Shown: piece by piece, positions 33,990-59,163 of the stretch
Layout: every line of letters starts with the position of its first letter
How positions within the stretch are numbered: position 1 is the first letter of the stretch
From: Octopus sinensis
Lineage: Eukaryota
DNA: 64,000 nt
Reading direction: 5' to 3'
Assembly: GCF_006345805.1 (NCBI RefSeq)
Contig: NC_043011.1
Span: forward strand, 35,042,464-35,106,463
The notes under the pieces: generated by a model
Told to the model about the DNA's origin: nothing
The model's database searches: none
Seen by the model: the letters and a program-made list of their open reading frames with translations, nothing else
Position numbers and translations under genes: made by a program

Positions 33990-36826
33990 TCAGCAGGCCA
34001 AAGACAGACATCATCTCATTGCGCGGGTCTTCCATTTGAAATTATACAAACTCATGAACTTCATCACCAAAGGTCAAATATTTGACCCCGTGCGATGCGA
34101 CATGTATACCGTCGAATGGCAGAAAAAGGGTTTTCCTCATGCTTATATCCTAATTTGGTTGTCCACACAGATTGCATCCGATGCAATTGATAATTTAATC
34201 TCAGCCGAGTTCCCTGACCCCTCTATCGATAGGACTCTCTTTGAGACAGAAGGCTAACATGATCCAAAGTCCCTGCAGACGAGGATTCAACCTTCGATTG
34301 CCTTGCATGAAGGGGTCAGTTTGCAGCAAGAAATACCCAAAACAATTCCTCCAGGAAACACAATCCGGGCACGATTGGTACCCTCTGTGCAGACGAAGGA
34401 AACCAGAGGACGGTGGATTCACAGCGCATGTTGGTCCGTATGAAGTAGACAACAGATGGATAGTGCCTTACTGCCCAATCCAGTCGAAGGCATTCGATGC
34501 TTACATAAATGTCGAGCTCTGCAATTCTGTAAAGTCCATCAAATATGTGTGCAAGTACATCAACAGAGGCCCTGATGCTGCTGTGTTCGGCCTGCAACCA
34601 GACGGAGTCCGAGATGAAATAACGCAATACCAAGTAGGCAGATTCATAATTAGTAACAAAGCCTTCTGGCGCATTTTCGGGTTTCCATTGCATCAAAGGC
34701 ATCCGCCAATCCAGCAGCTTGCAGTGCACCTTGAAAACGGCCAGCATGTGTACTTCACCGCTTCCACTGCTACTCCAGTGTTTGAGCAACCAAAAGATAC
34801 AACACTCACGGCTTTCTTCAAACTCTGCCAGGTAGGCCTGTTTGCACAAGATCTGCTTTATCCTCAAGTCCCGTCATACTACACATGGAATAAGTGTAAG
34901 TGGCAGCGAAGGAAGTCAGGCCGAACCGTTGATGGTCACTCTGAGATTAAATTTGATAATTGCCTCGGCAGAAAGTATACGGTTCACCCGGGCCAACAAG
35001 AATGCTTCTACCTCCGATTGCTGCTTCACGAGGTAAGGGGTCCAAAGTCCTTCGACCAATTAAAGACCGTGAAACGCCATACGCCATACATGTGGTACGT
35101 TCAGGGAGGCCTGCTTACTACGTGGGGGTGTTAGAAGACGGTGCGCAGTGGGATGCTACGCTTGCGGAGGCTGCTGTTTCACAGTCACCGAAAAGTCTCA
35201 GAGCTCTGTTTTCTGTACTCCTGCACATTTGCCAACTTCACGATGCCCATTCATTGTGGTTGAAGTACAGACACGACCTATCAGAAGACTTCCAACTGCA
35301 TCATACCTGCTTGCCTGCTGAAAATGATTTCATTTACCTTGATATAGAGAACAAGACTGTTTCTCTGGGAGGTAATACCTTACCTACATACGGGCTGCCG
35401 CAACCATTGCGCCACGGGACGCCTTCAATACCAACAGAGTTAATACATGAAACATCCTATAACACTGAAGCCCTTAATCAAAACATCCAGTAAAATGAGC
35501 CCAAACGTCTGCCTGAGCAACAGTGGGCTTACACATGCAGAAACGAAAAAAGGGTATTTTTTTTCTTGATACGCCTGGAGGGACCGGAAAAACGTTTGTG
35601 ATTCAGCTTCTCCTTGCTAAAGACGTAGCCGTAGCTGTGGCTTCCTCTGGCATTGCAGCAACTTTACTGTTCAGTGGCACGACAGCGCAATCAACCTTTA
35701 AGCTACCATTTGATTTGGTAAGGTCCGCAGTGCCTTCCTGTAACATCACCAAAACGTCTGAAAAGGGCTTGCTTCTCTGGAGTTGCCAGCTGATAGTTTG
35801 TGATGAATGCACAATGACCCACAAGCGATCCCTCGAAGCTCTCAACACCACTCTTCAAGACGTCAGAGACTGTCCCGCTACGATGGGTGGTATAACTCTC
35901 TTCCTGTCTGGCGATTTCCGACAAACGCTTCCTGTAATACCCAAGGGAACCAGGGCAGATGTAGTCAGGGCCTACCCAAAGTCCTCCCCACTGTGGAAAA
36001 ATGTTACAACATTGTCTCTGAAAACAAACAGGAGAGCTCAGCTTCGTGGTGACCAGATGGCATCAGCTTCTGCATCTGACATATTGTCAATCGGAAACGG
36101 TACTGTTCCGCTCAATGAAGACGGAGAACTGTCACTAACTCACCTCTACACCACTGTCAGTAATTCCGATTAACTAGAGGCACATGTCTTTCCAAATCTA
36201 CAAAGGAACTACTTTGACATGAATTGGATTTCCGAAAGAGGCATTTTGGCTCCAAAAAACAGCACAGTAACCGCTCTCAACACTAAGCTGCTGCATTCGC
36301 TTCCCGGAAGGCTGCACAAGCACGAGTCAATCGATTCTGTACCCGGCGACGACCAGGCAGTGAACTATCCAGTGGAGTTTCTTAATTCCCTTGACCCACC
36401 TGGCCTGCCTCCTCAAACACTGGAAGTTAAAGTCGGAGCTCCTGTCATGCTGCTGAGGAATTTAGACTCTCCAAAGCTTTGCAATGGGACACGCTTGGTT
36501 ATTAAGAAAGCTATGCAGTACCTTCTTGAAGTCACCATTTTGTCCGGCTGTTTTCATCCCCAGAATCCCCCTCATTCCATCTGGTGCAGATATTCCCTTT
36601 GCTTTTCACCGTCTGCACTTCCCGCTTAGACTATGTTTTGCAATGTCAATCAATAAGTCACATGGGACAGACACTATTCGTGGCAGGGCTGCATTTAGAT
36701 GAATCATGCTTCTCACACGGTCAGCTATACGTCGGTTCTTCCCGGATGGGAAGCAAGGAAAGTCTCTTCGTTTACTCACGCCGGGGTAGAACGAAAAATA
36801 TTGTCTACCAAGAAGTATTAGGATGA
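33990..36826 (+). mobile_element. Helitron Rep-PIF1 helicase (RepHel) coding remnant, 5'-truncated, frameshifted
   Basis: Rep motifs VEWQKKGFPHAYILIWL and YVCKYIN; SF1B helicase motifs PGGTGKTF, DECTM, GDFRQTLPVI, CNGTRL, FAMSINKSHG, HGQLYVGSSR. Confidence 0.95.
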
Positions 36827-37559: not shown

Positions 37560-37735
37560 TTACATTGTCAACTCTAACCGTATCCGTCCAATTATAAATT
37601 TTTTATTAAACTCCAATGAGCCTAGTAACAAACTGTATGTTACTTTAACATGTATGCAAAGTTTCATGAAGATTCATCAACAGGCATAGACAGCATCTTG
37701 ACACAAACAGACTGCCGTTTATATATGTATAGATA
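37560..37735 (-). mobile_element. Helitron-type 5' terminal segment
   Basis: Minus strand starts A|TCTATACATATATAAACGGCAGTCTGTTTGTG, resembling the 5' end of the element at 23473-23857. Confidence 0.5.
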
Positions 37736-37743
37736 GATATATG

Positions 37744-37800
<57 letters not shown>

Positions 37801-37812
37801 ATATATATATAT

Positions 37813-40800
37813 ATTAATTAATCAATATAGGGTGGCAAAAAAAAATTTTGTAGAATTCTTTTTGCCACCAGCGGCCTAGTGGGAAAAAATTAAATAGTCA
37901 TAGACCATTTTTAAGTTCAATATCAACAATCAAGGAACGGCCATAATAGGCCATTCACCCACTAGAAATAACAGCCAAGCTTCAACCGCAAATAAAGATT
38001 AATTCCGTAAACAGGAGAAAATTTAAAAAACATTACCCTGTAATTTCTTGTACGATGCACCGTTTCATCTGCTGTTTAATGGTAAACTAACCTGATTAAA
38101 TTAAATCAAGCCAATCTTCCATAGGCCCTCAGATTCTTCAGCAAGAAATAGCCAAGTCGGAACAGATATTTTCACGAGGCATTTCAGACCCTGCCAAGGT
38201 AATATCTGACCTAAAATTTTCAAATCGTCGCACTCGCGCCAAATTTATCGGCAGCAAAATAATATAAGCCGTCGATTCCATTACGGAATTAACCAGAAAA
38301 TTCATAATTAATCAATATAGGGTGGCAAAAAAAAATTTTGTAGAATTCTTTTTGCCACCAGCGGCCTAGTGGGAAAAAATTAAATAGTCATAGACCATTT
38401 TTAAGTTCAACATCAACAATCAGGAACGGCCATAATAGGCCATTCACCCACTAGAAATAACAGCCAAAGCTTCAACGCAAATAAAGATTAATTCCGTAAA
38501 CAGGAGAAAATTTAAAAAACATTTACCCTGTAATTTCTTGTACGATGCACCGTTCATCTGCTGTTTAATGGTAAACTAACCTGATTAAATTAAATCAAGC
38601 CAATCTTCCATAGGCCCTCAGATTCTTCAGCAAGAAATAGCCAAGTCGGAACAGATATTTTCACGAGGCATTTCAGACCCTGCCAAGGTAATATCTGACC
38701 TAAAATTTTCAAATCGTCGCACTCGCGCCAAATTTATCGGCAGCAAATAAATATAAGCCGTCGATTCCATTACGGAATTAACCAGAAAATTCATAATTAA
38801 TCAATATAGGGTGGCAAAAAAAATTTTGTAGAATTCTTTTTGCCACCAGCGGCCTAGTGGGAAAAAATTAAATAGTCATAGACCATTTTTAAGTTCAACA
38901 TCAACAATCAAGGAACGGCCATAATAGGCCATTCACCCACTAGAAATAACAGCCAAAGCTTCAACCGCAAATAAGATTAATTCCGTAAAAGGAGAAAATT
39001 TAAAAAACATTACCTGTAATTTCTTGTACGATGCACCGTTTCATCTGCTGTTTAATGGTAAACTAACCTGATTAAATTAAATCAAGCCAATCTTCCATAG
39101 GCCCTCAGATTCTTCAGCAAGAAATAGCCAAGTCGGAACAGATATTTTCACGAGGCATTTCCGACCCTGCCAAGGTAATATCTGACCTAAAATTTTCAAA
39201 TCGTCGCGCACTCGCGCCAAATTTTCGGCAGCAAATAAATATAAGCCGTCGATTCCATTACGGAATTAACCAGAAAATTCATAATTAATCAATATAGGGT
39301 GGCAAAAAAAAATTTTGTAGAATTTTTTTGCCACCAGCGGCCTAGTGGGAAAAAATTAAATAGTCATAGACCATTTTTAAGTTCAACATCAACAATCAAG
39401 GAACGGCCATAATAGGCCATTCACCCCTAGAATAACAGCCAAAGCTTCAACCGCAAATAAGATTAATTCCGTAAACAGGAGAAAATTTAAAAAACATTTA
39501 CCCTGTAATTTCTTGTACGATGCACCGTTTCATCTGCTGTTTAATGGTAAACTAACCTGATTAAATTAATCAAGCCAATCTTCCATAGGCCCTCAGATTC
39601 TTCAGCAAGAAATAGCCAAGTCGGAACAGATATTTTCACGAGGCATTTCAGACCCTGCCAAGGTAATATCTGACCTAAAATTTTCAAATCGTCGCACTCG
39701 CGCCAAATTTATCGCAGCATAAATATAAGCCGTCGATTCCATTACGGAATTAACCAGAAAATTCATAATTAATCAATATAGGGTGGCAAAAAAAAATTTT
39801 GTAGAATTCTTTTTGCCACCAGCGGCCTAGTGGGAAAAAATTAAATAGTCATAGACCATTTTTAAGTCAACATCAACAATCAAGGAACGGCCATAATAGG
39901 CCATTCACCCACTAGAAATAACAGCCAAAGCTTCAACCGCAAATAAAGATTAATTCCGTAACAGGAGAAAATTTAAAAAACATTTACCCTGTAATTTCTT
40001 GTACGATGCACCGTTTCATCTGCTGTTTAATGGTAAACTAACCTGATTAAATTAAATCAAGCCATCTTCCATAGGCCCTCAGATTCTTCAGCAAGAAATA
40101 GCCAAGTCGGAACAGATATTTTCACGAGGCATTTCAGACCCTGCCAAGGTAATATCTGACCTAAAATTTTCAAATCGTCGCACTCGCGCCAATTTATCGG
40201 CAGCAAATAAATATAAGCCGTCGATTCCATTACGGAATTAACCAGAAAATTCATAATAATCAATATAGGGTGGCAAAAAAAAATTTTGTAGAATTCTTTT
40301 TGCCACCAGCGGCCTAGTGGGAAAAAATTAAATAGTCATAGACCATTTTTAAGTTCAACATCAACAATCAAGGAACGGCCATAATAGGCCATTCACCCAC
40401 TAGAAAAACAGCCAAAGCTTCAACCGCAAATAAAGATTAATCCGTAAAAACAGGAGAAAATTTAAAAAACATTTACCCTGTAATTTCTTGTACGATGCAC
40501 CGTTTCATCTGCTGTTTAATGGTAAACTAACCTGATTAAATTAAATCAAGCCAATCTTCCATAGGCCCTCAGATTCTTCAGCAAGAAATAAGCCAATCGA
40601 ACAGATATTTTCACGAGGCATTTCAGACCCTGCCAAGGTAATATCTGACCTAAAATTTTCAAATCGTCGCACTCGCGCCAAATTTATCGGCAGCAAATAA
40701 ATATAAGCCGTCGATTCCATTACGGAATTAACCAGAAAATTCATAATTAATCAATATAGGGTGGCAAAAAAAAATTTTGTAGAATTCTTTTTGCCACCAG

Positions 40801-41037
40801 CGGCCTAGTGGGAAAAAAATTAAATAGTCATAGACCATTTTTAGTTCAACATCAACAATCAAGAACGGCCATAATAGGCCATTAAACAGCAGATGAAACG
40901 GTGCATTTACAAGAAATTACAGGGTAAATGTTTTTTAGATTTTCCTCCTTGTACGGGAATTAATCTTTATTTGCGGTTGAAGCTTTGGCTGTTATTTCTA
41001 GTGGGTGAATGGCCTATTATGGCCGTTCCTTGATTGT

Positions 41038-41040
<3 letters not shown>
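37813..41040 (-). repeat. Tandem array of about 489-bp hammerhead-containing units (6 full plus partial) with a terminal inversion; retrozyme-like
   Basis: Unit starts recur at about 486-490-bp spacing; inverted partial unit at 40884-41040; (TA)n on both sides. Confidence 0.92.
38043..38149 (-). ncRNA. Type I hammerhead ribozyme (array 1; further copies start at 38533, 39019, 39508, 39994, 40483)
   Basis: Stem I ATTTCTTG/CAAGAAAT, core CTGAAGA, stem II ATCTG/CAGAT, GAAA, stem III ACGGT-GC-ATCGT, GUA cleavage site between 38051 and 38050. Confidence 0.9.
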
Positions 41041-41091
<51 letters not shown>

Positions 41092-41379
41092 GTCTGTATA
41101 TCTATATACATGTATGTGAGTATATATGTACACACACACACACACACACATAATATATATATTGCGTGTGTGTACACATGTGTGTGCATATATAGATGAA
41201 TCAATTTATTGACTTTTGAAATTTCTCTAACCATGCTGTTACAGACAATCCCCCGCTTGGCTGTCTGATCGATTAATTTTCAAATCTAGATAGAATTTAA
41301 ATATGTTTGCTTTAAATTCTATAAATTTTAACCTTAACAGAACAAATAACTCTCCATTAGATAAATAAAACATTAGAAG

Positions 41380-42324: not shown

Positions 42325-43380
42325 AGGCGGCGAGCTGGCAGAAACGTTAGCACGCTGGGCGAAATGCTTAGCGGTATTTCGTCTGCCGTTACGTTCTGAG
42401 TTCAAATTCCGCCGAGGGCGACTTTACCTTTCATCCTTTCGGGGTCGATTAAATAAGTACCAGTTACGCATTGGGGTCGATATAATCGACTTAATCCGTT
42501 TGTCTGTCCTTGTTTGTCCTCTCTGTGTTTAGCCCCTTGTGGGTAATAAAGAAATAGGTATTTCATCCGTCACTACGTTCTGAGTTCAAATTCCGCCGAG
42601 GGCGACTTTGCCTTTCATCCTTTAGGGGTCGATTAAATAAGTACCAGTTACGCACTGGGGTCGATATAACCGACTTAATCCTTTTGTCAGTCCTTGTTTG
42701 TCCCCTCTGTGTGTAGCTTCGTGTGGGCAGTAAAGAAAGAAGAATCGTTAGGATGCCGGGCGAAATGCTTAGCAGTATTTCGTCTGCCGTTACGTTCTGA
42801 GTTCAAATTCTGCCGAGGTCGACTTTGCTTTTCATCTTTTCGGGGTCGATAAATTAAGTACCAGTTGTACACTGGGGTCGATGTAATCTGTTTGTCTGCC
42901 CTTGTTTGTCCCCTCTATGTTTAGTCCCTTGTGGGCAATAAAGAAATACGAATCGTTAGCACGCTGGACATAAAGCTAAGCGGTATTTCACCCGTCGCCA
43001 CGTTCTGAGTTCAAATTCCGCCGATGTCGACTTTGCTTTTCATCCATTTGGGGTCGATAAACTAAGCACCAGTTGAACACTGGGGTCGATGTAATCGACT
43101 CATCCTCACCTCTCCCAAGCTATCTTTGTGGCCAAAATTTGAAATAATATTAATTGAATGTAAAGCTGGCGAGCTGGCCGAAGGATTAATATAAGTGTTT
43201 GGCGGCATTTCGTCCGTCTTTACGTCCTGAGTCCAAATATCGCCGAGGTCGACTTTGCCTTGCATCCTTTCGGGGTCAATAAATTTAAGTATGAGATGAA
43301 CTCTGGGATCGATGTAATCGACTTACCCCATTCCCTAAAATTGCTGGCCTTGTGCCAAAATTTGAAACCAGTATTAATTG
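42325..43380 (+). mobile_element. Head-to-tail cluster of about five SINE family B units
   Basis: Repeated gagttcaaattccgccgag...ggggtcgat..ataagtaccag blocks starting near 42325, 42557, 42742, 42950 and 43165. Confidence 0.85.
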
Positions 43381-43405: not shown

Positions 43406-43505
43406 NNNNNNNNNNNNNNNNNNNNNNNNNNNNNNNNNNNNNNNNNNNNNNNNNNNNNNNNNNNNNNNNNNNNNNNNNNNNNNNNNNNNNNNNNNNNNNN
43501 NNNNN
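43406..43505. other. Assembly gap (100 N)
   Basis: Run of N. Confidence 1.
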
Positions 43506-44832: not shown

Positions 44833-46675
44833 ATTTGTATATATATATATATCAGTATATATCTGCATGTATGTATGTATGTATGTATGTATGTATGTAT
44901 GTATGTATGTATGTATACATATATATATATATGTACATTTCTTACGGCCGTTTCCGATTCCAATCTTAGTCGGTGCTTATGAAAGAAATTCCGAAACTAA
45001 TATTCATCATCTCCATAGCATATTTGATCTAGTACACGGAGCTTCATCAGAGTGAAACGGAAACGGCCGTAAGAAAGGTCTTGAATTGAAACAGCTGTAA
45101 GGGATGTTTGACAATTTTTTAATTATTAAATGATTATTTATTATCTCTCTATTTTCCTATCTTATGATAAATAAATATATATATATAAACCATGGTTTAT
45201 ATAGTTACCTTGCAGTTGAGTATTAACTGTAATTTTCAACATTCTTTGTATAGGTAACTAACCAGTACATTCATAGGATTTTGCTGTCCCTGAATGAGGT
45301 TTTTAACCTCATTATTCATATATATATATGTTGTCCCCCACCCAAAGTTCGTTTCTATGTTTTTGTTTTTAGGTTTTTGTTTCTCATTGTGTTCAGCATT
45401 TTTTTTATGTCCTGTACCCATATATGCATGTATATATACATATATATGTAGGCATGTACATAAATGTATGTATATATGTATATATCTATATATTATTTAT
45501 ATTATTGTATGATCGAACGCCACGCATCCTTTTCCAAGTAAGTTTTATCTAAATAATTAAGATGCGCGCACTCTTCTATCTCTACTATCTCTCATCTGTC
45601 TATATATATCTCTCTCTCTTGTTCTTCATCCTTTCTAGTTTTCTCTTCTACCCTTCCCTATTCTTCTCTTCTCCTCTTCACCGTTCCCTCTCTCTCACTC
45701 CTCTACCTCGACTCTCTCATCGCTGACACGTAACGAAAGAGAATCTATCTTTCTGCTCGCTACCTTCCTAAAGACAAAGCGTGCTTATACCTGTCTCCTC
45801 TAATAAGCTCGTCTTCCTAGCGTTCATAATAATTTTTCTATCGTCTTGGCTTAACAACCCTCACTGTTTGTTTTTACAGTTTTGTTCTTACTGTCCTGTT
45901 CTTGTTACCAGTTTAACTCTCCGGAAAAAATCCCAAATTTTATTTAATTTGCTTTGCAGGAAAGTCTGTTTCAACGAAGTCGCGTATTGTCCTTGCCGTC
46001 GTAACGCGGAGTACATGAAACAGGGACAACTGATGAAGGGGAATATTCTTTATGTTGCATGTCTCGTTTCTCTGTTTTTTTCATTGTTCCCCCCAAAAGT
46101 TCGTTTCTATATTTTTGTTTTTATGTTTTCGTTTCTCATTGTGTTCAACGTTTTTTTTTATGTTCTGTACCCAAATATGCACGCATATAATAATATATGT
46201 AGATATGTACATATACTTATGTATTTATGCATATATTTATATATTATTTATATTATTATATATGGCCGTCTCTCAGCTTCCATCGACCAAATTCACTCAC
46301 TAATCTTTAGTTGGCCCGGAGATATAGTAGATGATATTTTCACAAGGTGCCACGCAATGGGATTGAACCCGGAACCATGGTACTGGGAAGCAAACCTTTT
46401 AACACAGAGCCACGCGGGAGGATTTTTTTTTTACCTATGCTTAGTGTTTGGGGCCCAATTTTAGAGTCAAAATGAAAGTCCGTGTTGAAGACGCACATTT
46501 AAAGGTTAATATTCACGATTAGGCAGTGGCGATATTATCGATAACATTCAATATAATGGTTCCGGCTTCAGTCCCTCTGCGTGGCACCTTCGGCAAGTGT
46601 CTTCTGCTATAAGCCTCGGGCCGACCAAAGTCTTGTGAGTGAATTTGGTAGACTGAAACTGAAAGTAGCCTATCC

Positions 46676-47049: not shown

Positions 47050-47520
47050 TTAGGCTGCAGGGAAAGACCAATAGTTTAGGGGCCAGCTTAGAAGTTAATA
47101 ATTAAGGAATAAGTTCAGGGTCTCGATTTAAGGTTAATAGTTAATGATTAAAGTTTAGGGTCCAGTTTAGAGGTTAATAATTAAGGATAATATTTAGGGA
47201 TCTAGTCAGAGGTAGGATAATAGTTAAGGATAAAATTCAGGGTCTAGATTAAAGGTTAATAGTTAATGATAAAGATTAGGGTCCAGTTTAGAGGTAATAG
47301 TTAAGGATGAAGTGTAGGGTCCAGTTTAAAGGTTAATAATTAAGGATAATATTTTGGGTCTATCCAGAGGTAGGCTAATAGATAGAGATAAAATTTAAGG
47401 GTCAGGCTTGAGGTTAACAGTCAAGAATAATGTTTAGGGTCCAAGTAAATGGTTTATTGTTAAGGATTATGTTATGGTAAGAGCTTGGACCTGGGGAATA
47501 GGATTAAACTTGTGCTAATC
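47050..47520 (+). repeat. Degenerate tandem repeat of about 42 bp (ttagggtccagtttagaggttaata.ttaaggataa)
   Basis: Read directly; a reverse-complement array lies at about 55920-56330. Confidence 0.75.
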
Positions 47521-48503
47521 TTTATGGTTTGAATGTTTAGTGTTTCAAAGCAACTGTAGTTCGCCAAAGTTGCAAAATATATTCAGGAAAAATCAAAGGT
47601 ATATTGGTGTATGTGCATGTGTATATATGTGTGTATATAAGTACGAACACATACATAAATACTACACGCATGTAAAGAAAGGGGGGAGAGAGAAAGAGAG
47701 GGAGCAAGAGAGAAAGGGAGAGAGAGGGGGAGAAAGAGGAGGATATATAGATAGAGAGAGAAAGAAAAAGAAAACGAGAGAAGCCGGGATGAGGAGACAG
47801 AGTGAGAGAGAGAGAGAGAGAGAGGAGAGAGAAAGAAAGAAAGGAAGGAAGCAAGAGGGGAGGGAGAGAAGGGGATGTATAAACAGAGAGGGAAATGAAA
47901 AGAAAAAGAGGGAAGCCGAGAGTGAGGAGAGTGGGAGAGAGAGAAAGAGAGAAAGAGCAAGAGGAGGAGAGAGAAATAAAGAAAGAAAGGGAGCTAGAGA
48001 GAGAGAGAAAAAAGGGGAGCTATAGATAGAGAGGGAGCGGAAAAGAAAAAGAGAGAACTGGGAGTGAGGAGAGAGAGATAGAGAGAGAAAAAGAGAGGGA
48101 GAGAGAGGAAGAAAGAATGAGAGTGAGGTGAGAGCAAGAAGGGAAGCTTGGTCTATCAAGTGGAACAATGTGTCCGGAATATGGACGAATTTAGGAAGCG
48201 ATAGTAACTGGACTGGAAAGTCACCCGAGGATCTAGAAATAGAGCGACGGAACGAGAAGCGTCAACCGCGAATTCGAGGAACAATCACGAATATAGGTGT
48301 ATGTGTGTGTGTGTGTGTGTTGTGTCTTCCAACGGCTTAGTGATTCTGTCAATTCGCTGGCTTTAAACAATTATGTTTAGGTCAGTGCATACATACATAC
48401 ATACATACATGTACATAGTGTGTGTGTGTGTGTGTTTGTGTATATATGTATGTATATATAGATATGTAGTTATATACTGTATATATATATATATATATAT
48501 ATA

Positions 48504-48557
<54 letters not shown>

Positions 48558-48569
48558 TATAATATAAAA

Positions 48570-51500
48570 TAAATATAAAATAAATATAAGAGAGTGGTCA
48601 CTATATTGCTCACTCTAGCACCAGTTAATCCAAAAGTTTCAACCACGAAAATACATGTTTCCCATGAAAGCCAGTACGACTGTTAGCTCACACGGACAGG
48701 GCAAGTAAAAAATAACAAAAATACAGATTATTTTGGGACAATTGTTTCGCTATTAATGAATTAAATGTAATATTACTTACAAAAAAATCCATTGTAGCTC
48801 GTCAGCCAAGACTATCTGGATGAAATCCACTCAATCACACGCCAGATTTTACCATAACGATAAATACGCGTGTGGTTCAATTGATTACATCCGACGTTAT
48901 AATTCAAATGCCCCAACCAACAGCGCGCCAAACTTTCACGGAAAACAAATACAGCATTTAGAAATAAATGCAGCATAATTATAATTAATTAATAAGGGTG
49001 AGAGAATTAGATACTAATTTAATAGTATATTTATTCAACACCAAGTGGCCTAGTGCTACGAGAAACCTGGATTATTATAATATTTTATAACATATTATAA
49101 TATTTTTACAAAATAAATATAAGAGAGTGGTCACTATATTGCTCACTCTAGCACCAGTTAATCCAAAAGTTTCAACCACGAAAATACATGTTTCCCATGA
49201 AAGCCAGTACGACTGTTAGCTCACACGGACAGGGCAAGTAAAAAATAACAAAAATACAGATTATTTTGGGACAATTGTTCGCTATTAATGAATTAAATGT
49301 AATTACTACTTACAAAAAAATCCATTTGTAGCTCGTCAGCCAAGACTATCTGGATGAAATCCACTCAATCACACGCCAGATTTTACCATAACGATAAATA
49401 CGCGTGTGGTTCAATTGATTACATCCGACGTTATAATTCAAATGCCCCAACCAACAGCGCGCCAAACTTCACGGAAAACAAATACAGCATTTAGAAATAA
49501 ATGCAGCATAATATAATAATTAATAAGGGTAGAGAATTAGATACTAATTTATAGTATATTTATTCAACACCAAGTGGCCTAGTGCTACGAGAAACCTGGA
49601 TTATTATAATATTTTATACATATTATAAAATTTTTACAAAATAAATATAAGAGAGTGGTCACTATATTGCTCACTCTAGCACCAGTTAATCCAAAAGGTT
49701 TCAACCACGAAAATACATGTTTCCCATGAAAGCCAGTACGACTGTTAGCTCACACGGACAGGCAAGTAAAAAATAACAAAAATACAGATTATTTTGGGAC
49801 AATTGTTTCGCTATTAATGAATTAAATGTAATATTACTTACAAAAAAATCCATTTGTAGCTCGTCAGCCAAGACTATCTGGATGAAATCCACTCAATCAC
49901 ACGCCAGATTTTACCATAACGATAAATACGCGTGTGGTTCAATTGATTACATCCGACGTTATAATTCAAATGCCCCAACCAACAGCGCGCCAAACTTTCA
50001 CGGAAAACAAATACAGCATTTAGAAATAAATGCACATAATTATAATTATTAATAAGGGTGAGAGAATTAGATACTAATTAATAGTATATTTATTCAACAC
50101 CAAGTGGCCTAGTGCTACGAGAAACCTGGATTATTATAATATTTTATAACATATTATAATATTTTTACAAAATAAATATAAGAGAGTGGTCACTATATTG
50201 CTCACTCTAGCACCAGTTAATCCAAAAGGTTTCAACCACGAAAATACATGTTTCCATGAAAGCCAGTACGACTGTTAGCTCACACGGACAGGGCAAGTAA
50301 AAAATAACAAAAATACAGATTATTTTGGGACAATTGTTTCGCTATTAATGAATAAATGTAATATTACTTACAAAAAAATCCATTTGTAGCTCGTCAGCCA
50401 AGACTATCTGGATGAAATCCACTCAATCACACGCCAGATTTTACCATAACGATAAATACGCGTGTGGTTCAATTGATTACATCCGACGTTATTTCAATTG
50501 GCTGACGAGCTACAATGGATTTTTTTGTAAGTAATATTACATTTAATTCATTAATAGCGAAACAATTGTCCCAAAATAATCTGTATTTTGTTATTTTTAC
50601 TTGCCCTGTCCGTGTGAGCTAACAGTCGTACTGGCTTTCATGGGAAACATGTATTTTCGTGGTTGAAACCTTTTGGATAACTGGTGCTAGAGTGAGCAAT
50701 ATAGTGACCACTCTCTTATATTTTATTTGTAAAAATATTATAATATGTTATAAAATATATAATAATCCAGGTTTCTCGTAGCACTAGGCCACTTGGTGTT
50801 GAATAAATATACTATTAAATTAGTATCTAATTCTCTCACCCTTATTATTAATTATAATTATGCTGCATTTATTTCTAAATGCTGTATTTGTTTTCCGTGA
50901 AAGTTTGGCGCGCTGTTGGTTGGGGCATTGAATTATAACGTCGGATGTAATCAATTGAACCACACGCGTATTTATCGTTATGGTTAAATCTGGCGTGTGA
51001 TTGAGTGGATTTCATCCAGATAGTCTTGGCTGACGACTACAAATGGATTTTTTTGTAAGTAATTACATTTAATTCATTAATAGCGAAACAATTGTCCCAA
51101 AATAATCTGTATTTTGTTATTTTTACTTGCCCTGTCCGTGTGAGCTAACAGTCGTACTGGCTTTCATGGGAAACATGTATTTTCGTGGTTGAAACCTTTT
51201 GGATTAACTGGTGCTAGAGTGAGCAATATAGTGACCACTCTCTTATATTTATTTTGTAAAAATATTATAATATGTTATAAAATATTATAATAATCCAGGT
51301 TTCTCGTAGCACTAGGCCACTTGGTGTTGAATAAATATACTATTAAATTAGTATCTAATTCTCTCACCCTTATTATTAATTATAATTATGCTGCATTTAT
51401 TTCTAAATGCTGTATTTGTTTTCCGTGAAAGTTTGGCGCGCTGTTGTTGGGGCATTTGAATTATAACGTCGGATGTAATCAATTGAACCACACGCGTATT

Positions 51501-51910
51501 TATCGTTATGGTAAAATCTGGCGTGTGATTGATGGATTTCATCCAGATAGTCTTGGCTGACGAGCTACAAATGGATTTTTTTGTAAGTAAATTACATTTA
51601 ATTCATTAATAGCGAAACAATTGTCCCAAAATAATCTGTATTTTGTTATTTTTTACTTGCCCTGTCCGTGTGAGCTAACAGTCGTACTGGCTTTCATGGA
51701 AACATGTATTTTCGTGGTTGAAACCTTTTGGATTAACTGGTGCTAGAGTGGCCAATATAGTGACCATCTCTTATATTTATTTTGTAAATATTATAATATG
51801 TTATAAAATATTATAATAATCCAGGTTTCTCGTAGCACTAGGCCACTTGGTGTTGAATAAATATACTATTAAATTAGTATCTAATTCTCTCACCCTTATT
51901 AATTAATTAT
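48570..51910. repeat. Tandem array of about 530-bp hammerhead-containing units with a central inversion; retrozyme-like
   Basis: About 3.6 units in one orientation (48570-50493) and about 2.7 in the other (50497-51910); (TA)n on both sides. Confidence 0.92.
50498..50574 (+). ncRNA. Type I hammerhead ribozyme (array 2; + copies also at 51026 and 51553; - copies at 48733, 49266, 49794, 50325)
   Basis: Stem I TTGG/CCAA, core CTGACGA (50502-50508), stem II GCTA/TAGC, GAAA (50559-50562), palindromic stem III ACAATTGT, GUC cleavage after 50570. Confidence 0.92.
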
Positions 51911-51914
51911 ATAT

Positions 51915-51954
<40 letters not shown>

Positions 51955-52124
51955 ATATATATATATATACATACAATAAGAGGGATGACCACTAAATGGA
52001 CATCCATTATGCTAGAAGTAGACCCTCTACGGTCTACCACTAAGAAAGGATTGTTCTCAAGAATATTTAGCAAACGCCAGAACGTAAGCGACCAAGACAA
52101 ATGAAAAGATACAAAATTAAAGAT

Positions 52125-52200
52125 TAATCACAAACCCAGTTTCGTTGTTACCCCTTAGGTTATTACTTACATAATTGTCCGCAACTCATCAGTGCGATCA
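52125..52200 (-). ncRNA. Type I hammerhead ribozyme in a monomeric element of about 350 bp (about 51966-52320)
   Basis: Stem I TGATCGCA/TGTGATTA, CTGATGA, stem II GTTG/CAAC, GAAA, stem III ACT-G-GGT, GUU triplet (suboptimal). Confidence 0.75.
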
Positions 52201-52318
52201 TCATAGTAAAATATAATTTGAAGAACTATACAGGAGACGTCCGCATGAGATTGAACATGTGTACAGTTCTACCAATTACATTTGGGTCTATCTTTCAAAA
52301 GTCTTCGTTGTGACGCGC

Positions 52319-52377
<59 letters not shown>

Positions 52378-54611: not shown

Positions 54612-54915
54612 ATGCTTGTTGTTGTTGTTCCTTCTCGAGCCACGCTTGGCTCATAGGGCCGGTTTCCCGGTTTCCTTAGCGTACAGGTTCCCCACCTGGA
54701 CGGGATGCCGGTCCATCGTAGGTGAGCTGCAATATGTAGGAGGAAAGAGTGAGAGAAAGTTGTGGCGAAAGAGTCAGCAGAAGTTCGCCATTACCTTCTG
54801 CCGGAGCCGCGTGGAGCTTAGGTGTTTCGCTCATAAACACACATCGCCTGGTCTGAGATTCCAACCCGCGATTCCTCGACCGCGATTCCGCTGCTCTAAC
54901 CACTAGGCCATGTGT
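54612..54915 (-). mobile_element. tRNA(Arg)-like headed SINE with an RTE-like (AAC)n tail
   Basis: Same head family as 8040-8422; tail ggaaaccgggaaaccggcc...ctcgagaaggaacaacaacaa. Confidence 0.75.
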
Positions 54916-56349
54916 CTCCACCGAGTTAATAAGCTTAACAACTAACAAAAACGTGAAGTGTTAACCAAAACGTGAAAAGATAATAAAACGAAGAAATATA
55001 GCTCATTGAAAAATTAATTTTCAAAGAATTAGTAAACCATTGTAATTTTTTTGAAGAAATCGAGAGGCATTTATTTCTATGACCGTTGATTGAAGATGCC
55101 TAAGTAGCAATGGAATAGAAGTAATTCAGCTTTAATAATGGACCAATCTATCCATGCTAGTAAGGATAAAATAAAAATGCTGTATGATACTATTGACGCG
55201 TCATTGATTAAAAAGTCGATAAGCCTTCTCGGCGAAACGCGTAAAAAATCACGCCTACCGTCTCGTGCCACTAAATCAAGAAAATAAAATAAAAAATAAC
55301 CGTAAACTTGATTATTTTTGTACTTATCGGCGGAATTTTTGAACGAATCAACATCCAAAAAATATTTCTACAAGGTGGTATAATTTTTATGCAGAACAAA
55401 TCGAAGATGCAAGCAACAAAAAAAGCAAATGGTAATACGACTAAAAATATAACTTTTTTTTTCACTTCATAAAATCTTTTCTTTTAAACAACAATTTCCA
55501 CAAAAAATTGACGAACTATTAAACAGAAGAGCCCGTAGATTATGCAAGTGTGCTTTTTATTAAAATCGCCCACAAAACATGACCTCCACAGCTTGCAGAA
55601 TCGATCGAAAATGGGTTTTGTTGTCCTAGTAACCACAGCTTTGGAGATGGAGATTTCTAACCTAGTCCAGTCGCTTCCTCGCCTCATTTTACATGTCCCT
55701 GTAAATTTTCGCCACAATCCGAGCACGCCTACTGTCATTGAATCCTGCATAACCACCAAATGAGACAAGCAAACATACAACTTTCAGCCATTTCACTTTT
55801 ATATAGAGAGACTACTAAACACGTTATAAGCTGACCTACCAATTTCTGTTTCAGCATATGCACAAGCACAATTTTAATCGTAATATCCAGATCCACGCTC
55901 TTACCGTAAGATAATCCTTGACTATAAACTTTTTACTTGGACCCTAAACATTATATTTAACTATTAACTCCCAAGCCTAACCCCTAAACTTTATCCTTAT
56001 CTATTAATCTACCTCTAGCCAGCCTCTTCAATATTATCCTTAATTATTAACCTCTAAACTGGACTCTAAAACTTTATCCTTAACTACTAACCTGTAAATT
56101 ACACCTTTAAACTTTCCTGGACCCTACATTTTATCTTGGACTATTAATCTCTAAACCTAACCCAAAATATTATCCTTGACTATTAGCTTCCAAATTGGAC
56201 CCTAAACTTTATCGTTGATTGTTAGCCTTTCACCTGGACCCTGAACTTTATCGTAAACTACTAATCTCTAAATCTGACCCTAAATGTCATCCTTGATTAT
56301 TAACTTCTAAACTCGACCCTAAACAGTTGTTGCATATACACAAATGTGT

Positions 56350-57943: not shown

Positions 57944-59163
57944 CAGAGATGACAGAAGTAAATAGACACTCAATAAACTCTGTGTTCTATGCTTATTTTA
58001 ACTTGAAATGATTTGTATTTTTATTAATTGACATTTTTATGCTTCTGGTTCTACACGTGACTATTCAATCATGTCATGTACAAAATAAACCTTCTTACTG
58101 TCTGAATTTCAAAGAGGCCGTATTGTGGGGCAATCTAAAAGTGAACTTAGTGTAAAACTGCAGAAAACCTAGGGATCCTGTTTTCTACAGCTAATAGAGT
58201 GATTCCCACCAGAGATGGGAAAGAATCCACATCACCTCATCCAGATCAATAGGGGCCCTCTGACAGGATCCTTCTCTTTGTTAAGAGAAGTGTGGAGGAT
58301 AATCCTCGTTGCAAGTCCTCTGACATAGTAGAACAATTTGATGTCAGTCCCAGAAGAGCTGTCGGGTATCTCCACAAACTTGGTTACTATGGCAGAGCAG
58401 GAAGAAGGAAGCCACTTCTTCGACCAGCCAACATCAGGCGGAGAAAAGATTGGACCAGTGAGTTGATGGAGAGGCCACTAGCATTTTGGGCCACTATCAT
58501 ATTCCCTGATGTATTTTCTGACAGTGGTCGAGTGTGGGTCTGGAGACTCTGTGATCAAGAATTCGACATGAAAAGATTTCTGCCAACAATGAAACAGGCC
58601 TGCTATTTTGTGATTGTCTGGGGAGCAATTTGGAGCAATGGTCAGTCAGGGTTGGTAGAGTGTGATGGAAACATAAACCCAGATAAATATGTGTCCATAT
58701 TGCAGAAAGGACTCCTTTCAATCTTCTCCAATGGCGAAAGGATTAAAGAAGACTATTTATGGAAGATGGGAATCCTTGTCACACAGCTAAAACGACCCAA
58801 GATAGGTTGGAAAAGAATCGTATCAAAAAGTTTCTATGGCGAGACCAGTCACCAGATATGAACCCTATTGAACACGACTGGGACATAATGGACAGGACAC
58901 TTCATAAAAAGAACAAGAACGCATCCTCAAAGCCGGATCTTTTGAGATTACTACATGAAACTTGGTAAGAAATTCCTCAAGAGAATATTCATCTGATCAG
59001 GAGCATGTTTTATAGCATCCTTGAATTGAAAAATGCAAAGGGCACGTCTACTAAATAATAAGTATTGACATTATAATAAATATTAACTAATTTGAATGTA
59101 TAATTTCAGATTTAAATACATTTTAATGATCATAAGGGTGTCTATTTACTTCTGTTATGTCTG
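57944..59163 (+). mobile_element. Tc1-family transposon, near full length, frameshifted
   Basis: TIRs cagagatgacagaagtaaatagacac / gtgtctatttacttctgttatgtctg; transposase motifs LSEFQRGRIVG, VWGAIW, EDGNPCH, QSPDMNPIEHDW. Confidence 0.9.

What the first reader, a model, noticed from the sequence alone, without database searches (positions are those of the whole stretch)
51845..52015. Three unrelated hammerhead families end at the same 3'-terminal stem-bulge-stem motif
Seen, in ribozyme-sense orientation. Family 1: CACTAG-GCCGCT-GGTG[hairpin]CACC-CT-ATATTGATTAAT (minus, about 37875-37815). Family 2: CACTAG-GCCACTT-GGTG[hairpin]CACC-CT-TATTAATTAAT (plus, about 51836-51908). The monomer at 52 kb: CTAG-CATAAT-GGATG[hairpin]CATCC-CT-CTTATT (minus, 52015-51975). 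The hairpin interiors differ completely, but the frame (AG/CU pair, 6-7-nt 5' bulge, GG..CC stem, CU, AU-rich tail) is kept. In all three cases the insertion stops at this motif and abuts (TA)n. Inference: a cis element recognised by the mobilising reverse transcriptase or endonuclease (Penelope-like being the obvious candidate) that defines where cDNA synthesis starts. The stem-bulge-stem shape recalls the hepadnavirus epsilon priming element, as an analogy only. This is the most novel-looking signal in the window.
Basis: partly seen in the sequence, partly recalled or inferred. Interest (0 to 1): 0.88.

Follow-up and report, generated by a model that had tools for sequence, protein, structure and literature searches.

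The report
Retrozyme repeats' conserved reverse-transcription start sites
Three diverged but related families of hammerhead-ribozyme repeats (retrozymes) all end, next to (TA)n microsatellites, at one of two conserved hairpin-plus-AU-tail sites, which matches the internal reverse-transcription start sites already shown experimentally for Penelope-like retrotransposons, so this is a good new example of a known mechanism and not a new kind of signal.

Summary
The motif is real at the stated coordinates, but two parts of the description are wrong.

- **Not terminal-only.** It occurs in every monomer: 7 of 7 in Family 1 and 6 of 6 in Family 2.
- **Families are related.** They are colinear, diverged relatives (alignment z 5.9 and 5.5).
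- **Different fold.** In whole-unit folds, 'CACUAG + bulge' is the 3' strand of a long-range helix (P1/P2) with compensatory changes. Hairpin B and an accessible AU tail follow it.
- **Two extra ends.** Each ends at a second, upstream hairpin+tail module (A).
- **Five of five.** All five 3' ends lie about 9-17 nt past a hairpin at site A or B and abut (TA)n. Each two-armed insertion has one A end and one B end.
- **Controls.** A CTAG at that distance occurs at 1 of 29 other (TA)n flanks. Microhomology alone does not select the sites.

This matches Frangieh et al. 2024 for a Penelope-like element (PLE): nicking and extension of both strands of AT-rich DNA, and internal RT initiation at two sites downstream of the hammerhead, which define the 'tail'. 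Evidence is five ends in one window, with no external copies found. Interest is about 0.4.

The parts
37720..37814 (.). (TA)n tract flanking the 3' end of the F1 main arm
   Evidence: TRF; sequence
37815..40883 (-). Family 1 retrozyme array, main arm: 6.3 tandem units of 486-489 nt. Each unit has a type-I hammerhead and both modules A and B. The 3' end is at 37815.
   Evidence: TRF period 489, 97% matches; self-BLAST; hammerhead descriptor hits
37815..37881 (-). Terminal F1 module B: CACUAG-GCCGCU-GGUGGC[hairpin]GCCACC-CU-AUAUUGAUUAAUUA. The inferred RT start site B is at 37815.
   Evidence: hairpin z -3.9
38045..38147 (-). Example F1 hammerhead: CUGAAGA...GAAAC, helix III ACG/CGU, cleavage after GUA, 8-bp helix I
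   Evidence: Descriptor; helix table; helices I and II reproduced in the circular MFE
40879..41043 (+). F1 inverted arm (165 nt, ribozyme sense on + strand), joined head-to-head to the main arm through the 5-bp microhomology CCATT. It reads through the hammerhead cut site.
   Evidence: Self-BLAST; sequence
40998..41043 (+). Terminal F1 module A: CUAGUGGG-U-GAAUGGCC[UAUUAU]GGCCGUUC-CUUGAUUGUUGAUAU. The inferred RT start site A is at 41043.
   Evidence: hairpin z -3.5
41044..41108 (.). (AT)n tract flanking the F1 inverted arm
   Evidence: TRF
48441..48576 (.). (TA)n tract flanking the F2 minus arm. It includes an 11-nt duplicate (ATATTTATTTT) of the tail right at the junction.
   Evidence: TRF
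48577..50492 (-). Family 2 retrozyme array, minus-sense arm: about 3.6 units of about 529 nt, with its 3' end at module A
   Evidence: Self-BLAST
48577..48624 (-). Terminal F2 module A: CUGGUGCUA-GAGUG[loop]CACUC-UCUUAUAUUUAUUUU. The inferred RT start site A is at 48577.
   Evidence: The hairpin is weak: z -1.3, probability 0.56.
50493..50499 (.). 7-nt filler (TTCAATT) at the head-to-head junction of the two F2 arms
50500..51911 (+). Family 2 array, plus-sense arm: about 2.7 units, starting inside the hammerhead (GGCUGACGAG), with its 3' end at module B. The arms are up to 100% complementary to each other over 178 nt.
51551..51631 (+). Example F2 hammerhead: CUGACGAG...CGAAAC-AAUU-GUC, with a palindromic helix III loop
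   Evidence: Descriptor; helix table
51836..51911 (+). Terminal F2 module B: CACUAG-GCCACUU-GGUG[hairpin]CACC-CU-UAUUAAUUAAUUAUA. The inferred RT start site B is at about 51911.
51912..51969 (.). (TA)n tract shared by the converging 3' ends of the F2 plus arm and F3
   Evidence: TRF
51970..52324 (-). Family 3 single partial unit (about 350 nt), flanked by (TA)n on both sides. Its 5' end lies at the TTGGCGCG block. The 3' end is ambiguous between 51970 and 51975.
51970..52044 (-). F3 3' domain: UUAGUGGUAGACC[GUAGAG]GGUCUACUUCUAG (P2 register closing a plain hairpin), then CAUAAU, then GGAUG[hairpin]CAUCC-CU-CUUAUUG(UAUG)
   Evidence: Fold z -4.5; helix table
52125..52200 (-). F3 hammerhead: CUGAUGAG...CGAAAC-UGG-GUU, with an 8-bp helix I
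   Evidence: Descriptor; weak Rfam Hammerhead_3 match, 16 bits
52325..52377 (.). (AT)n tract flanking the 5' end of F3
   Evidence: TRF

Best explanation
F1, F2 and F3 are three diverged families of metazoan non-LTR retrozymes. These are non-coding tandem repeats carrying a type-I hammerhead, and here they were inserted into (TA)n microsatellites by the machinery of a Penelope-like element (PLE).

Each unit carries a conserved structured domain about 60-290 nt downstream of the hammerhead cut. A long-range helix (P1+P2, containing the CUAG sequences) encloses hairpin A and its AU-rich tail. It is followed by hairpin B, CU, and a second AU-rich tail.

The tails are mostly single-stranded. Reverse transcription starts in them, about 9-17 nt 3' of the hairpin base (9-13 in F3, whose junction is ambiguous), primed by the nicked AT-rich target DNA. 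Initiation is internal, on an uncleaved multimeric or a circular RNA.

Both DNA strands of the target are primed. This gives head-to-head two-armed insertions with one arm ending at site A and the other at site B. The A-to-B segment (104 nt in F1, 129 nt in F2) corresponds to the PLE 'tail' that is present at only one end of an insertion.

Shown here: the positions of the ends, the structures, the covariation and the target. Inferred: that a PLE RT/EN did this, and that the hairpins, and not just the tails, are what the protein recognises.
For: ENDS
- All five 3' ends abut (TA)n with sharp junctions.
- They fall at only two kinds of site. Site A is 38 nt (F1) or 39 nt (F2) after the P2 5' strand. 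Site B is 55 nt (F1) or 64 nt (F2) after the P1 3' strand.
- A CTAG 38-80 nt upstream occurs at 5 of 5 retrozyme ends against 1 of 29 other (TA)n flanks.
- Microhomology is insufficient. In F1, 60 unit positions are more (TA)n-like than either end used.

STRUCTURE
- Helices are highly probable in circular ensembles: F1 at least 0.97, F2 0.8-0.9. Tails are unpaired at 0.49-0.77 against a unit mean of 0.36.
- Compensatory changes: P1 C-G to U-A; P2 G-C to C-G and G-C to U-A; hairpin B U-A to A-U and G-C to U-A.
- CACTAGGCC and the site-B junction ATTAATTAT are among the few identical colinear blocks between F1 and F2.

TEMPLATE AND ARMS
- The ends are not at the hammerhead cut, and the F1 inverted arm reads through it. 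The template was therefore uncleaved or circular.
- Arms are head-to-head, with 5-bp microhomology or a 7-nt filler at the inner junction. F2 arms are up to 100% identical.

LITERATURE
- PAc PLE nicks and extends both strands of AT-rich DNA and starts RT internally at two sites downstream of the hammerhead. The 'tail' is the segment between them, and unprocessed RNA is the template (PMC11167929).
- PLE insertions are tandem or inverted, favour (TA)n and carry a tail at one end. Non-autonomous elements share 3' ends with autonomous ones (PMC8557442).
- Retrozymes are proposed PLE derivatives (PMC7229834; bioRxiv 10.64898/2026.07.22.740005).
Against: - Only five ends in one 64-kb window. Because the families are homologous, these amount to about two independent site types.
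- The module definition was partly post hoc. A broad null, in which AT-only sites lie 38-78 nt after a CTAG, gives only P of about 0.005-0.01 for four ends.
- Hairpin A of F2 is weak (z -1.3, probability 0.56).
- No PLE RT/GIY-YIG ORF is present in the window, so the partner element is unidentified.
- In PAc, initiation is inside an AC-rich stem-loop, the tail is about 34 nt, and no strand preference for either site was seen. Here the sites are AU-rich single-stranded tails 104-129 nt apart.
- No further copies or relatives could be retrieved.
- The published mussel retrozyme shows no significant similarity.
- The source organism was not identified.
Confidence: 0.68

Rival explanations
1. Microhomology only (twin-priming-like). 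The nicked (TA)n target simply anneals to any accessible AU-rich stretch of the RNA. The hairpins and CUAG helices are ordinary structure of a self-paired retrozyme RNA and are not recognised by any protein.
For: - All five junctions lie in AT-rich tails, and the target is (TA)n.
- The tails are more accessible than average.
- The F2 ends are fairly (TA)-like, 5-6 of 8.
- An 11-nt slippage duplicate sits at the F2-A junction.
- EN-minus PLEs are known to attach to telomeric overhangs, reportedly aided by specific sequence stretches (PMC8557442).
Against: - The F1 ends score only 4 of 8 for (TA)-likeness, with 60 better positions in the unit.
- The long AT-rich spacer in F2 (AAUAUUAUAAUAUGUUAUAAAAUAUUAUAAUAAU) is not used.
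- The same two structural positions are used in diverged families: 38 and 39 nt after P2.
Confidence: 0.15
2. The arrays grew and were trimmed after insertion. Unequal crossing-over made the tandems, and (TA)n microsatellites were born or expanded from AT-rich parts of terminal units. On this view the 'ends' are not RT start sites.
For: - (TA)n is extremely common in this window: 17 tracts in 64 kb.
- The 2026 preprint favours local amplification for array growth.
Against: - Junctions are sharp.
- The most (TA)-like unit segments are not where the tracts sit.
- The 5' end of F3 also abuts (AT)n, although its own sequence there (GGCGCG) is not AT-rich.
- Inverted arms with 5' junctions at different unit positions, joined by microhomology or filler, are typical of retro-insertion.
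Confidence: 0.07
3. Read on the opposite strand, each module is 'hairpin, 0-9 nt, CTAG'. That is the signature of a Helitron 3' terminus, and the repeats could be Helitron-carried satellites.
For: - All five modules fit hairpin-spacer-CTAG on the reverse strand.
- A PIF1-like helicase lies on the + strand at 35523-36629, about 1.2 kb upstream of the F1 array.
Against: - Insertion boundaries are at the AT tail/(TA)n side, never at CTAG. Unit sequence continues on both sides of every CTAG.
- The array ends at 40883, 75 bp past the last CTAG.
- 51838-52014 would hold two outward-facing termini sharing one (TA)n.
- Only 2 of 5 CTAGs are followed by T, and no 5' TC follows in tandem.
- No Helitron Rep domain was detected.
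Confidence: 0.03
4. CACTAGGCC is conserved at the DNA level as an antisense Pol III A-box (GGCCTAGTGG matches TRGCNNAGTGG), not as RNA structure.
For: - The reverse complement in F1 and F2 matches the A-box consensus at 10 of 11 positions.
- The same 9-mer is the A-box of a tRNA-derived SINE-like head at about 54.9 kb.
- F1 has a B-box-like AGTTCAATATC about 42 nt downstream on the antisense strand.
Against: - One extra occurrence of a 9-mer in 128 kb is expected by chance (about 0.5).
- F2 and F3 lack a B-box, and F3 lacks the A-box match.
- ARAGORN finds nothing.
- Compensatory changes in the RNA partner strand argue for RNA pairing.
- This reading does not explain the insertion ends.
Confidence: 0.05

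Closest known systems
Internal RT initiation sites and 'tail' of Penelope-like elements (Poseidon PAc of Anolis; Frangieh et al. 2024, PMC11167929)
   Same: - Initiation is internal to the RNA, downstream of the hammerhead and next to or within a stem-loop.
- There are two start sites, and the segment between them appears at only one end of an insertion.
- Both DNA strands are nicked and extended.
- The target is AT-rich.
- The RNA template is not hammerhead-cleaved.
   Different: - Here the elements are non-coding retrozymes.
- The sites are 104-129 nt apart (about 34 nt in PAc). They lie 129-288 nt after the cut (about 55-90 nt in PAc).
- Each site has its own hairpin. The start lies in an AU-rich single-stranded tail, not in an AC-rich stem-loop.
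- Some homology to the (TA)n target is possible.
- Nothing here is experimentally shown.
Metazoan non-LTR retrozymes (Cervera & de la Pena 2020, PMC7229834)
   Same: - Tandem repeats with one type-I hammerhead per unit.
- Low GC (33-36%) and no ORF.
- Short helix III with a small, often palindromic, loop.
- A predicted highly self-paired circle.
   Different: - Units are longer (486-529 nt) than the 150-450 bp described.
- Helix II carries a 40-65-nt insertion, so Rfam models miss them.
- Defined array ends and two-armed architecture are not mentioned in any passage of the held retrozyme papers returned by my term searches. These were term searches, not full readings.
- There is no significant similarity to the mussel Mg353 unit.
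Shared 3' stem-loop of stringent LINE/SINE pairs (eel UnaL2/UnaSINE1, Kajikawa & Okada 2002; from my own knowledge, not checked here)
   Same: A non-autonomous element carries the structured 3' region that the partner's RT recognises. cDNA synthesis starts in a short repetitive or AU-rich tail just 3' of a stem-loop.
   Different: In LINE/SINE pairs the site is the true 3' end of a linear RNA. Here it is internal in every unit of a multimeric or circular RNA, there are two sites, and a PLE-type and not a LINE-type RT is implied.
EN-minus PLEs (Athena/Coprina) attaching to telomeric overhangs (cited in PMC8557442)
   Same: PLE-family elements that use an exposed DNA 3' end as the primer for reverse transcription.
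   Different: Those elements lack an endonuclease and target chromosome ends. Here the complementarity to (TA)n is weak and does not by itself select the sites.
Hepadnavirus epsilon
   Same: A stem with an unpaired segment near which reverse transcription begins.
   Different: Epsilon directs protein-primed synthesis of a few nucleotides on its bulge, followed by primer transfer. Here priming is from nicked target DNA, and the 'bulge' is actually one strand of a long-range helix.

Membership tests
Metazoan non-LTR retrozyme | Type-I hammerhead with conserved core (CUGANGA / GAAA / UH) and helices I-III in the repeat unit | tested here: met
   Strict descriptor gives 10 hits, all in F1/F2/F3, and 0 in 50 shuffles. 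Helices covary between families. Rfam is below threshold. Self-cleavage was not tested.
Metazoan non-LTR retrozyme | Short head-to-tail tandem repeats (about 150-450 bp) of low GC, without LTR/PBS/PPT or ORF | tested here: met
   Tandem units of 486-489 and about 529 nt, slightly above the published range. GC is 0.33-0.36. There are no ORFs of 120 aa or more inside the arrays. PBS and PPT were not searched for explicitly.
Metazoan non-LTR retrozyme | Expressed as small circular RNAs | not testable with these tools
   No transcript data. The only indirect point is that cDNA reads through the hammerhead cut site.
PLE-type insertion (mobilised by a Penelope-like RT/GIY-YIG) | Insertion into AT-rich DNA or (TA)n microsatellites | tested here: met
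   All three insertions are flanked by (TA)n on both sides.
PLE-type insertion (mobilised by a Penelope-like RT/GIY-YIG) | Partial tandem plus an adjacent inverted 5'-truncated copy (head-to-head arms) | tested here: met
   F1: 37815-40883 (-) plus 40879-41043 (+). F2: 48577-50492 (-) plus 50500-51911 (+). F3 is single-armed.
PLE-type insertion (mobilised by a Penelope-like RT/GIY-YIG) | Two internal RT start sites downstream of the hammerhead, with the segment between them ('tail') present at one end only | tested here: met
   Ends lie at unit positions 129 and 233 (F1) and 159 and 288 (F2) after the cut. There is one A end and one B end per insertion. These are inferred from genomic ends only, and the tail is 3-4 times longer than the published 30-40 bp.
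PLE-type insertion (mobilised by a Penelope-like RT/GIY-YIG) | A cognate autonomous element (RT + GIY-YIG ORF) sharing this region | tested here: not met
   Pfam on 20 of the 31 ORFs of 120 aa or more finds only a LINE APE/RVT_1, a PIF1 helicase and a Tc3-like fragment. Absence from a 64-kb window says little about the genome.
Helitron 3' terminus | CTRR is the physical end of the inserted element, with a hairpin about 10 nt upstream and insertion between A and T | tested here: not met
   The hairpin-spacer-CTAG form is present on the reverse strand, but no insertion boundary coincides with CTAG. Boundaries are on the other side of the hairpin.
Hepadnavirus epsilon-like priming element | Protein-primed initiation templated by a bulge, followed by primer translocation | not testable with these tools
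   This is an analogy only. The junctions with target DNA point to target-primed synthesis, and the supposed bulge is predicted to be base-paired.

The most novel reading that the evidence does not exclude
The P1/P2-closed domain is a bipartite, pseudo-symmetric docking platform for a dimeric PLE RT/endonuclease. One protomer starts at tail A and the other at tail B, each priming from one strand of the cut (TA)n. Every complete event would then yield a two-armed insertion with exactly one A end and one B end. It would also allow a circular RNA with no 3' end to serve as a rolling-circle template. This would be a defined RNA element explaining both the odd tandem/inverted architecture of PLE-type insertions and how retrozyme circles are copied into tandem DNA.
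Probability: 0.15. Interest if true: 0.65.

Novelty: new member of a known kind. Interest (0 to 1): 0.4.

Why it matters
How animal retrozymes are copied back into DNA is still only hypothesised. How Penelope-like elements choose their start point has been worked out for a single lizard element in vitro.

If the reading here holds, retrozyme arrays carry the PLE-specific genomic signature: two internal start sites, a tail at one end, both strands primed, and a (TA)n target. That is direct evidence that PLE machinery mobilises them.

It also points to a compact, covarying RNA domain that could be tested as the RT-binding and start-site element. It shows too that the hammerhead cut does not define the cDNA end.

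The concept itself is already published, so the value is confirmatory and practical (a candidate element and clear predictions), not conceptual.

Tried and rejected
- **Rfam.** The gathering scan of the whole window gave 0 hits. The permissive scan gave only microsatellite-type miRNA matches, and a local scan gave Hammerhead_3 at 16 bits. The long helix II insertions explain the misses. I replaced Rfam with an explicit descriptor.
- **Metagenome scan.** CACTAGGCCRCT(N)GGTG returned 120+ loci. None had similarity to any unit or the rest of the module, so they are chance matches.
- **Repeat-encoded ORFs.** Exact-protein look-ups of two ORFs and a homology search with a 67-aa ORF, meant to fetch other genomic copies, found nothing.
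- **Source organism.** The 817-aa ORF at 9210-11663 has no homologue at 1e-10.
- **Mussel retrozyme Mg353.** Local similarity is marginal with F1 (z 2.6), absent with F2 (z 0.5), and it has no CTAG. This was a lead only.
- **Fourth hammerhead candidate.** The site at 44930-45075 (-) abutting (TA)n has a CUGAUGA...GAAAC core, but helices I and II do not form, and the descriptor rejects it.
- **Helitron-terminus reading.** Rejected on boundaries, as given under the rival explanations.
- **tRNA-likeness.** ARAGORN finds nothing.
- **Covariance model.** I did not build one from the modules. With three to five sequences, very different hairpin interiors, and only this window to search, it could only re-find its own training set.
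- **Automatic alignment.** MAFFT puts P2 one column out of register, so pair counts were made on a manual alignment.
Full report
**1. What is there**

The window holds three repeat families carrying a type-I hammerhead.

| Family | Structure | Coordinates |
|---|---|---|
| F1 | 486-489-nt unit, 6.3 tandem copies in minus sense, plus a 165-nt inverted arm | 37815-40883 (-); 40879-41043 (+) |
| F2 | about 529-nt unit, two head-to-head arms | 48577-50492 (-); 50500-51911 (+) |
| F3 | one partial unit, minus sense | 51970-52324 (-) |

- Rfam does not recognise the ribozymes: 0 hits at gathering and 16 bits for F3 in a local scan.
- A strict descriptor finds 10 sites, all in these families, and none in 50 composition-preserving shuffles. 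It requires CUGANGA, a 4-bp helix II base, GAAA, a 2-4-bp helix III with a small loop, UH, and at least 5 of 6 bp in helix I.
- The three helices keep pairing with different sequences in the three families.
- Helix III is short, with a small, partly palindromic loop, as described for metazoan type-I hammerheads (PMC4209133).
- Long (40-65 nt) helix II insertions explain why Rfam misses them.

**2. The observation**

Three parts of the description fail.

- **The motif is not terminal-specific.** It is present in all 7 F1 monomers and all 6 F2 monomers, and the TRF consensus unit starts with it.
- **The families are not unrelated.**
  - They are colinear and share the blocks TTGGCGCG, ATGTAAT, CACTAGGCC and ATTAATTAT, the hammerhead, and TGTAAGTAA in helix II of F2 and F3.
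  - Global alignment scores exceed shuffles by z 5.9 (F1-F2), 5.5 (F2-F3) and 2.2 (F1-F3).
  - They are nonetheless very diverged, with only 8-13-nt identical blocks.
- **The structural frame is different.**
  - In isolation, the F2 module does not even fold as proposed.
  - In circular folds of whole units, CACUAG+GCCRC is the 3' strand of a long-range helix. P2 is CUAGUGGG/CCCACUAG in F1 and CUGGUGCUA/UAGCACUAG in F2. P1 is GCGGU/GCCGC in F1 and GUGGU/GCCAC in F2.
  - Pair probabilities are at least 0.97 in F1 and 0.8-0.9 in F2.
P2 has two further double-sided changes. F3 keeps the P2 register as a plain hairpin. Hairpin B has two compensatory pairs between F1/F2 and F3.

**3. Two extra ends**

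Both arrays have an inverted arm whose outer end is also a 3' end in ribozyme sense.

- The F1 arm ends at 41043: CUAGUGGG-U-GAAUGGCC[UAUUAU]GGCCGUUC-CUUGAUUGUUGAUAU|(AT)n.
- The F2 minus arm ends at 48577: CUGGUGCUA-GAGUG[loop]CACUC-UCUUAUAUUUAUUUU|(TA)n.
- These are the hairpin and tail enclosed by P2, which I call module A.
- The units contain exactly two CTAGs (F1, F2) or one (F3), and each belongs to these helices.
- All five 3' ends therefore lie in an AU-rich tail about 9-17 nt past a hairpin base. The F3 junction is ambiguous, which gives 9-13 nt there.
- They fall at two structurally equivalent sites. Site A is 38 nt (F1) or 39 nt (F2) after the P2 5' strand. Site B is 55 nt (F1) or 64 nt (F2) after the P1 3' strand.
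- Each two-armed insertion has one A end and one B end.

**4. Is it more than chance?**

- Among the 34 flanks of the 17 (TA)n tracts in the window, a CTAG 38-80 nt from the junction occurs at all 5 retrozyme 3' ends and at 1 of the 29 others. By my arithmetic this gives a hypergeometric P of about 2e-5. Because the families are homologous, this really reflects two site types, not five independent events.
- Under a null of random AT-only sites within the unit, the four F1/F2 ends give P of about 0.005-0.01.
- Microhomology alone does not pick the sites. The F1 ends are only 4 of 8 (TA)-like, with 60 better positions in the unit. The long AT-rich spacer of F2 is unused.
- The tails are about twice as accessible as the unit average.
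- CACTAGGCC and the site-B junction ATTAATTAT are among the few blocks conserved between F1 and F2.

**5. Anatomy of the insertions**

- All three insertions are flanked on both sides by (TA)n.
- Inner junctions are at unrelated unit positions, joined by a 5-bp microhomology (F1) or a 7-nt filler (F2).
- The two F2 arms are up to 100% identical over 178 nt, which fits one event or one template pool.
- No 3' end is at the hammerhead cut, and the F1 inverted arm reads through it. The template was therefore an uncleaved multimer or a circle, and initiation was internal.

**6. What is known**

- Metazoan non-LTR retrozymes are tandem type-I hammerhead repeats expressed as circles and thought to be mobilised by PLEs (PMC7229834). 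A 2026 preprint derives them from PLE pseudo-LTRs.
- PLE insertions are typically partial tandems with an adjacent inverted 5'-truncated copy, a 30-40-bp 'tail' at one end, and a bias for (TA)n. Non-autonomous relatives share 3' ends with autonomous ones (PMC8557442).
- Frangieh et al. 2024 (PMC11167929) is decisive.
  - The purified PAc PLE nicks and extends both strands of AT-rich DNA.
  - It starts reverse transcription internally at two sites in a stem-loop downstream of the hammerhead.
  - The tail is the segment between those sites.
  - Unprocessed RNA is the main template, and the protein is predicted to be a dimer.
- The A/B pattern found here is the same signature in retrozymes, with differences.
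  - The sites are 104-129 nt apart, against about 34 nt in PAc.
  - Each site has its own hairpin.
  - The start lies in an AU-rich single-stranded tail, not in an AC-rich stem-loop.
- In the held literature I found no paper linking retrozyme array ends to PLE start sites.

**7. Rivals**

- **Microhomology-only priming.** This remains possible (about 0.15).
- **Post-insertional trimming or microsatellite birth.** This is unlikely, given the sharp junctions and the (AT)n at the non-AT-rich 5' end of F3.
- **Helitron terminus.** I took this seriously because the reverse strand reads hairpin-spacer-CTAG in all five modules and a PIF1-like helicase lies just upstream of F1. It fails because no boundary coincides with CTAG.
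- **Antisense Pol III A-box.** The resemblance (GGCCTAGTGG) is probably chance and does not explain the ends.

**8. Limits**

- The evidence is five ends in one window.
- The partner PLE is not in the window.
- No further copies could be retrieved.
- The mussel retrozyme comparison was inconclusive.
- The organism was not identified.

**9. Verdict**

- The structure proposed is replaced by a P1/P2-hairpin A-hairpin B domain with covariation support.
- Novelty: a new member of a known kind. Interest is about 0.4.

Noticed in passing
window 29399-31943 (-): Remnant of a LINE: ORFs with an APE-type endonuclease (Exo_endo_phos_2) and RVT_1 reverse transcriptase, split over several frames. It is not a Penelope-like RT.
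   Followed up: partly
window 35523-36629 (+): PIF1-like helicase ORFs (PIF1, Pif1_2B) in two pieces, possibly a decayed Helitron-type gene, about 1.2 kb upstream of the F1 insertion. No Rep domain was detected in the upstream ORFs.
   Followed up: partly
window about 54830-54925 (-): tRNA-derived SINE-like head with an A-box (TGGCCTAGTGG) and a B-box-like GGGTTGGAATC. It shares the 9-mer CACTAGGCC with the retrozyme motif, probably by chance. ARAGORN calls no tRNA.
   Followed up: partly
window 47114-47516 and 55865-56110: Inverted arrays of a 39-40-bp minisatellite (78-84% complementary), each next to a GA/TC-rich tract, bracket an 8.3-8.7-kb region that contains the F2 and F3 insertions. 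This may be a foldback-like element or the ends of a large transposon.
   Followed up: partly
window 44930-45075 (-): A 17-bp inverted repeat (TTCTTACGGCCGTTTCC ... GGAAACGGCCGTAAGAA) encloses a CUGAUGA...GAAAC-GGCC-GUA string and abuts (TA)n. It looks like a hammerhead at first sight, but helices I and II do not form and the descriptor rejects it.
   Followed up: partly
window 42390-43096, gap 43406-43505: Tandem copies of a 184-208-bp SINE-like unit (GGGGTCGAT... motifs) lie shortly before a 100-N assembly gap.
   Followed up: no
F1 unit positions 270-282 (e.g. window about 38570-38582, -) and F2 tail A: The 13-mer CTTATATTTATTT is identical between the F2 site-A tail and a non-colinear place in F1, the loop of a CGGC/GCCG hairpin 37 nt past site B. 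The mussel Mg353 unit has the similar TTATATTTAT. Its meaning is unknown.
   Followed up: no
window 58292-58861 (+): ORF with a weak Tc3-type transposase HTH match (below the Pfam cut-off).
   Followed up: no
window 48566-48576: An 11-nt direct duplicate (ATATTTATTTT) of the end of tail A sits exactly at the F2-A junction. This would fit slippage or reiterative copying at initiation.
   Followed up: no
window 9210-11663 (+): An 817-aa uninterrupted ORF with no Pfam domain and no homologue at E of 1e-10 or better in the large protein collection.
   Followed up: partly
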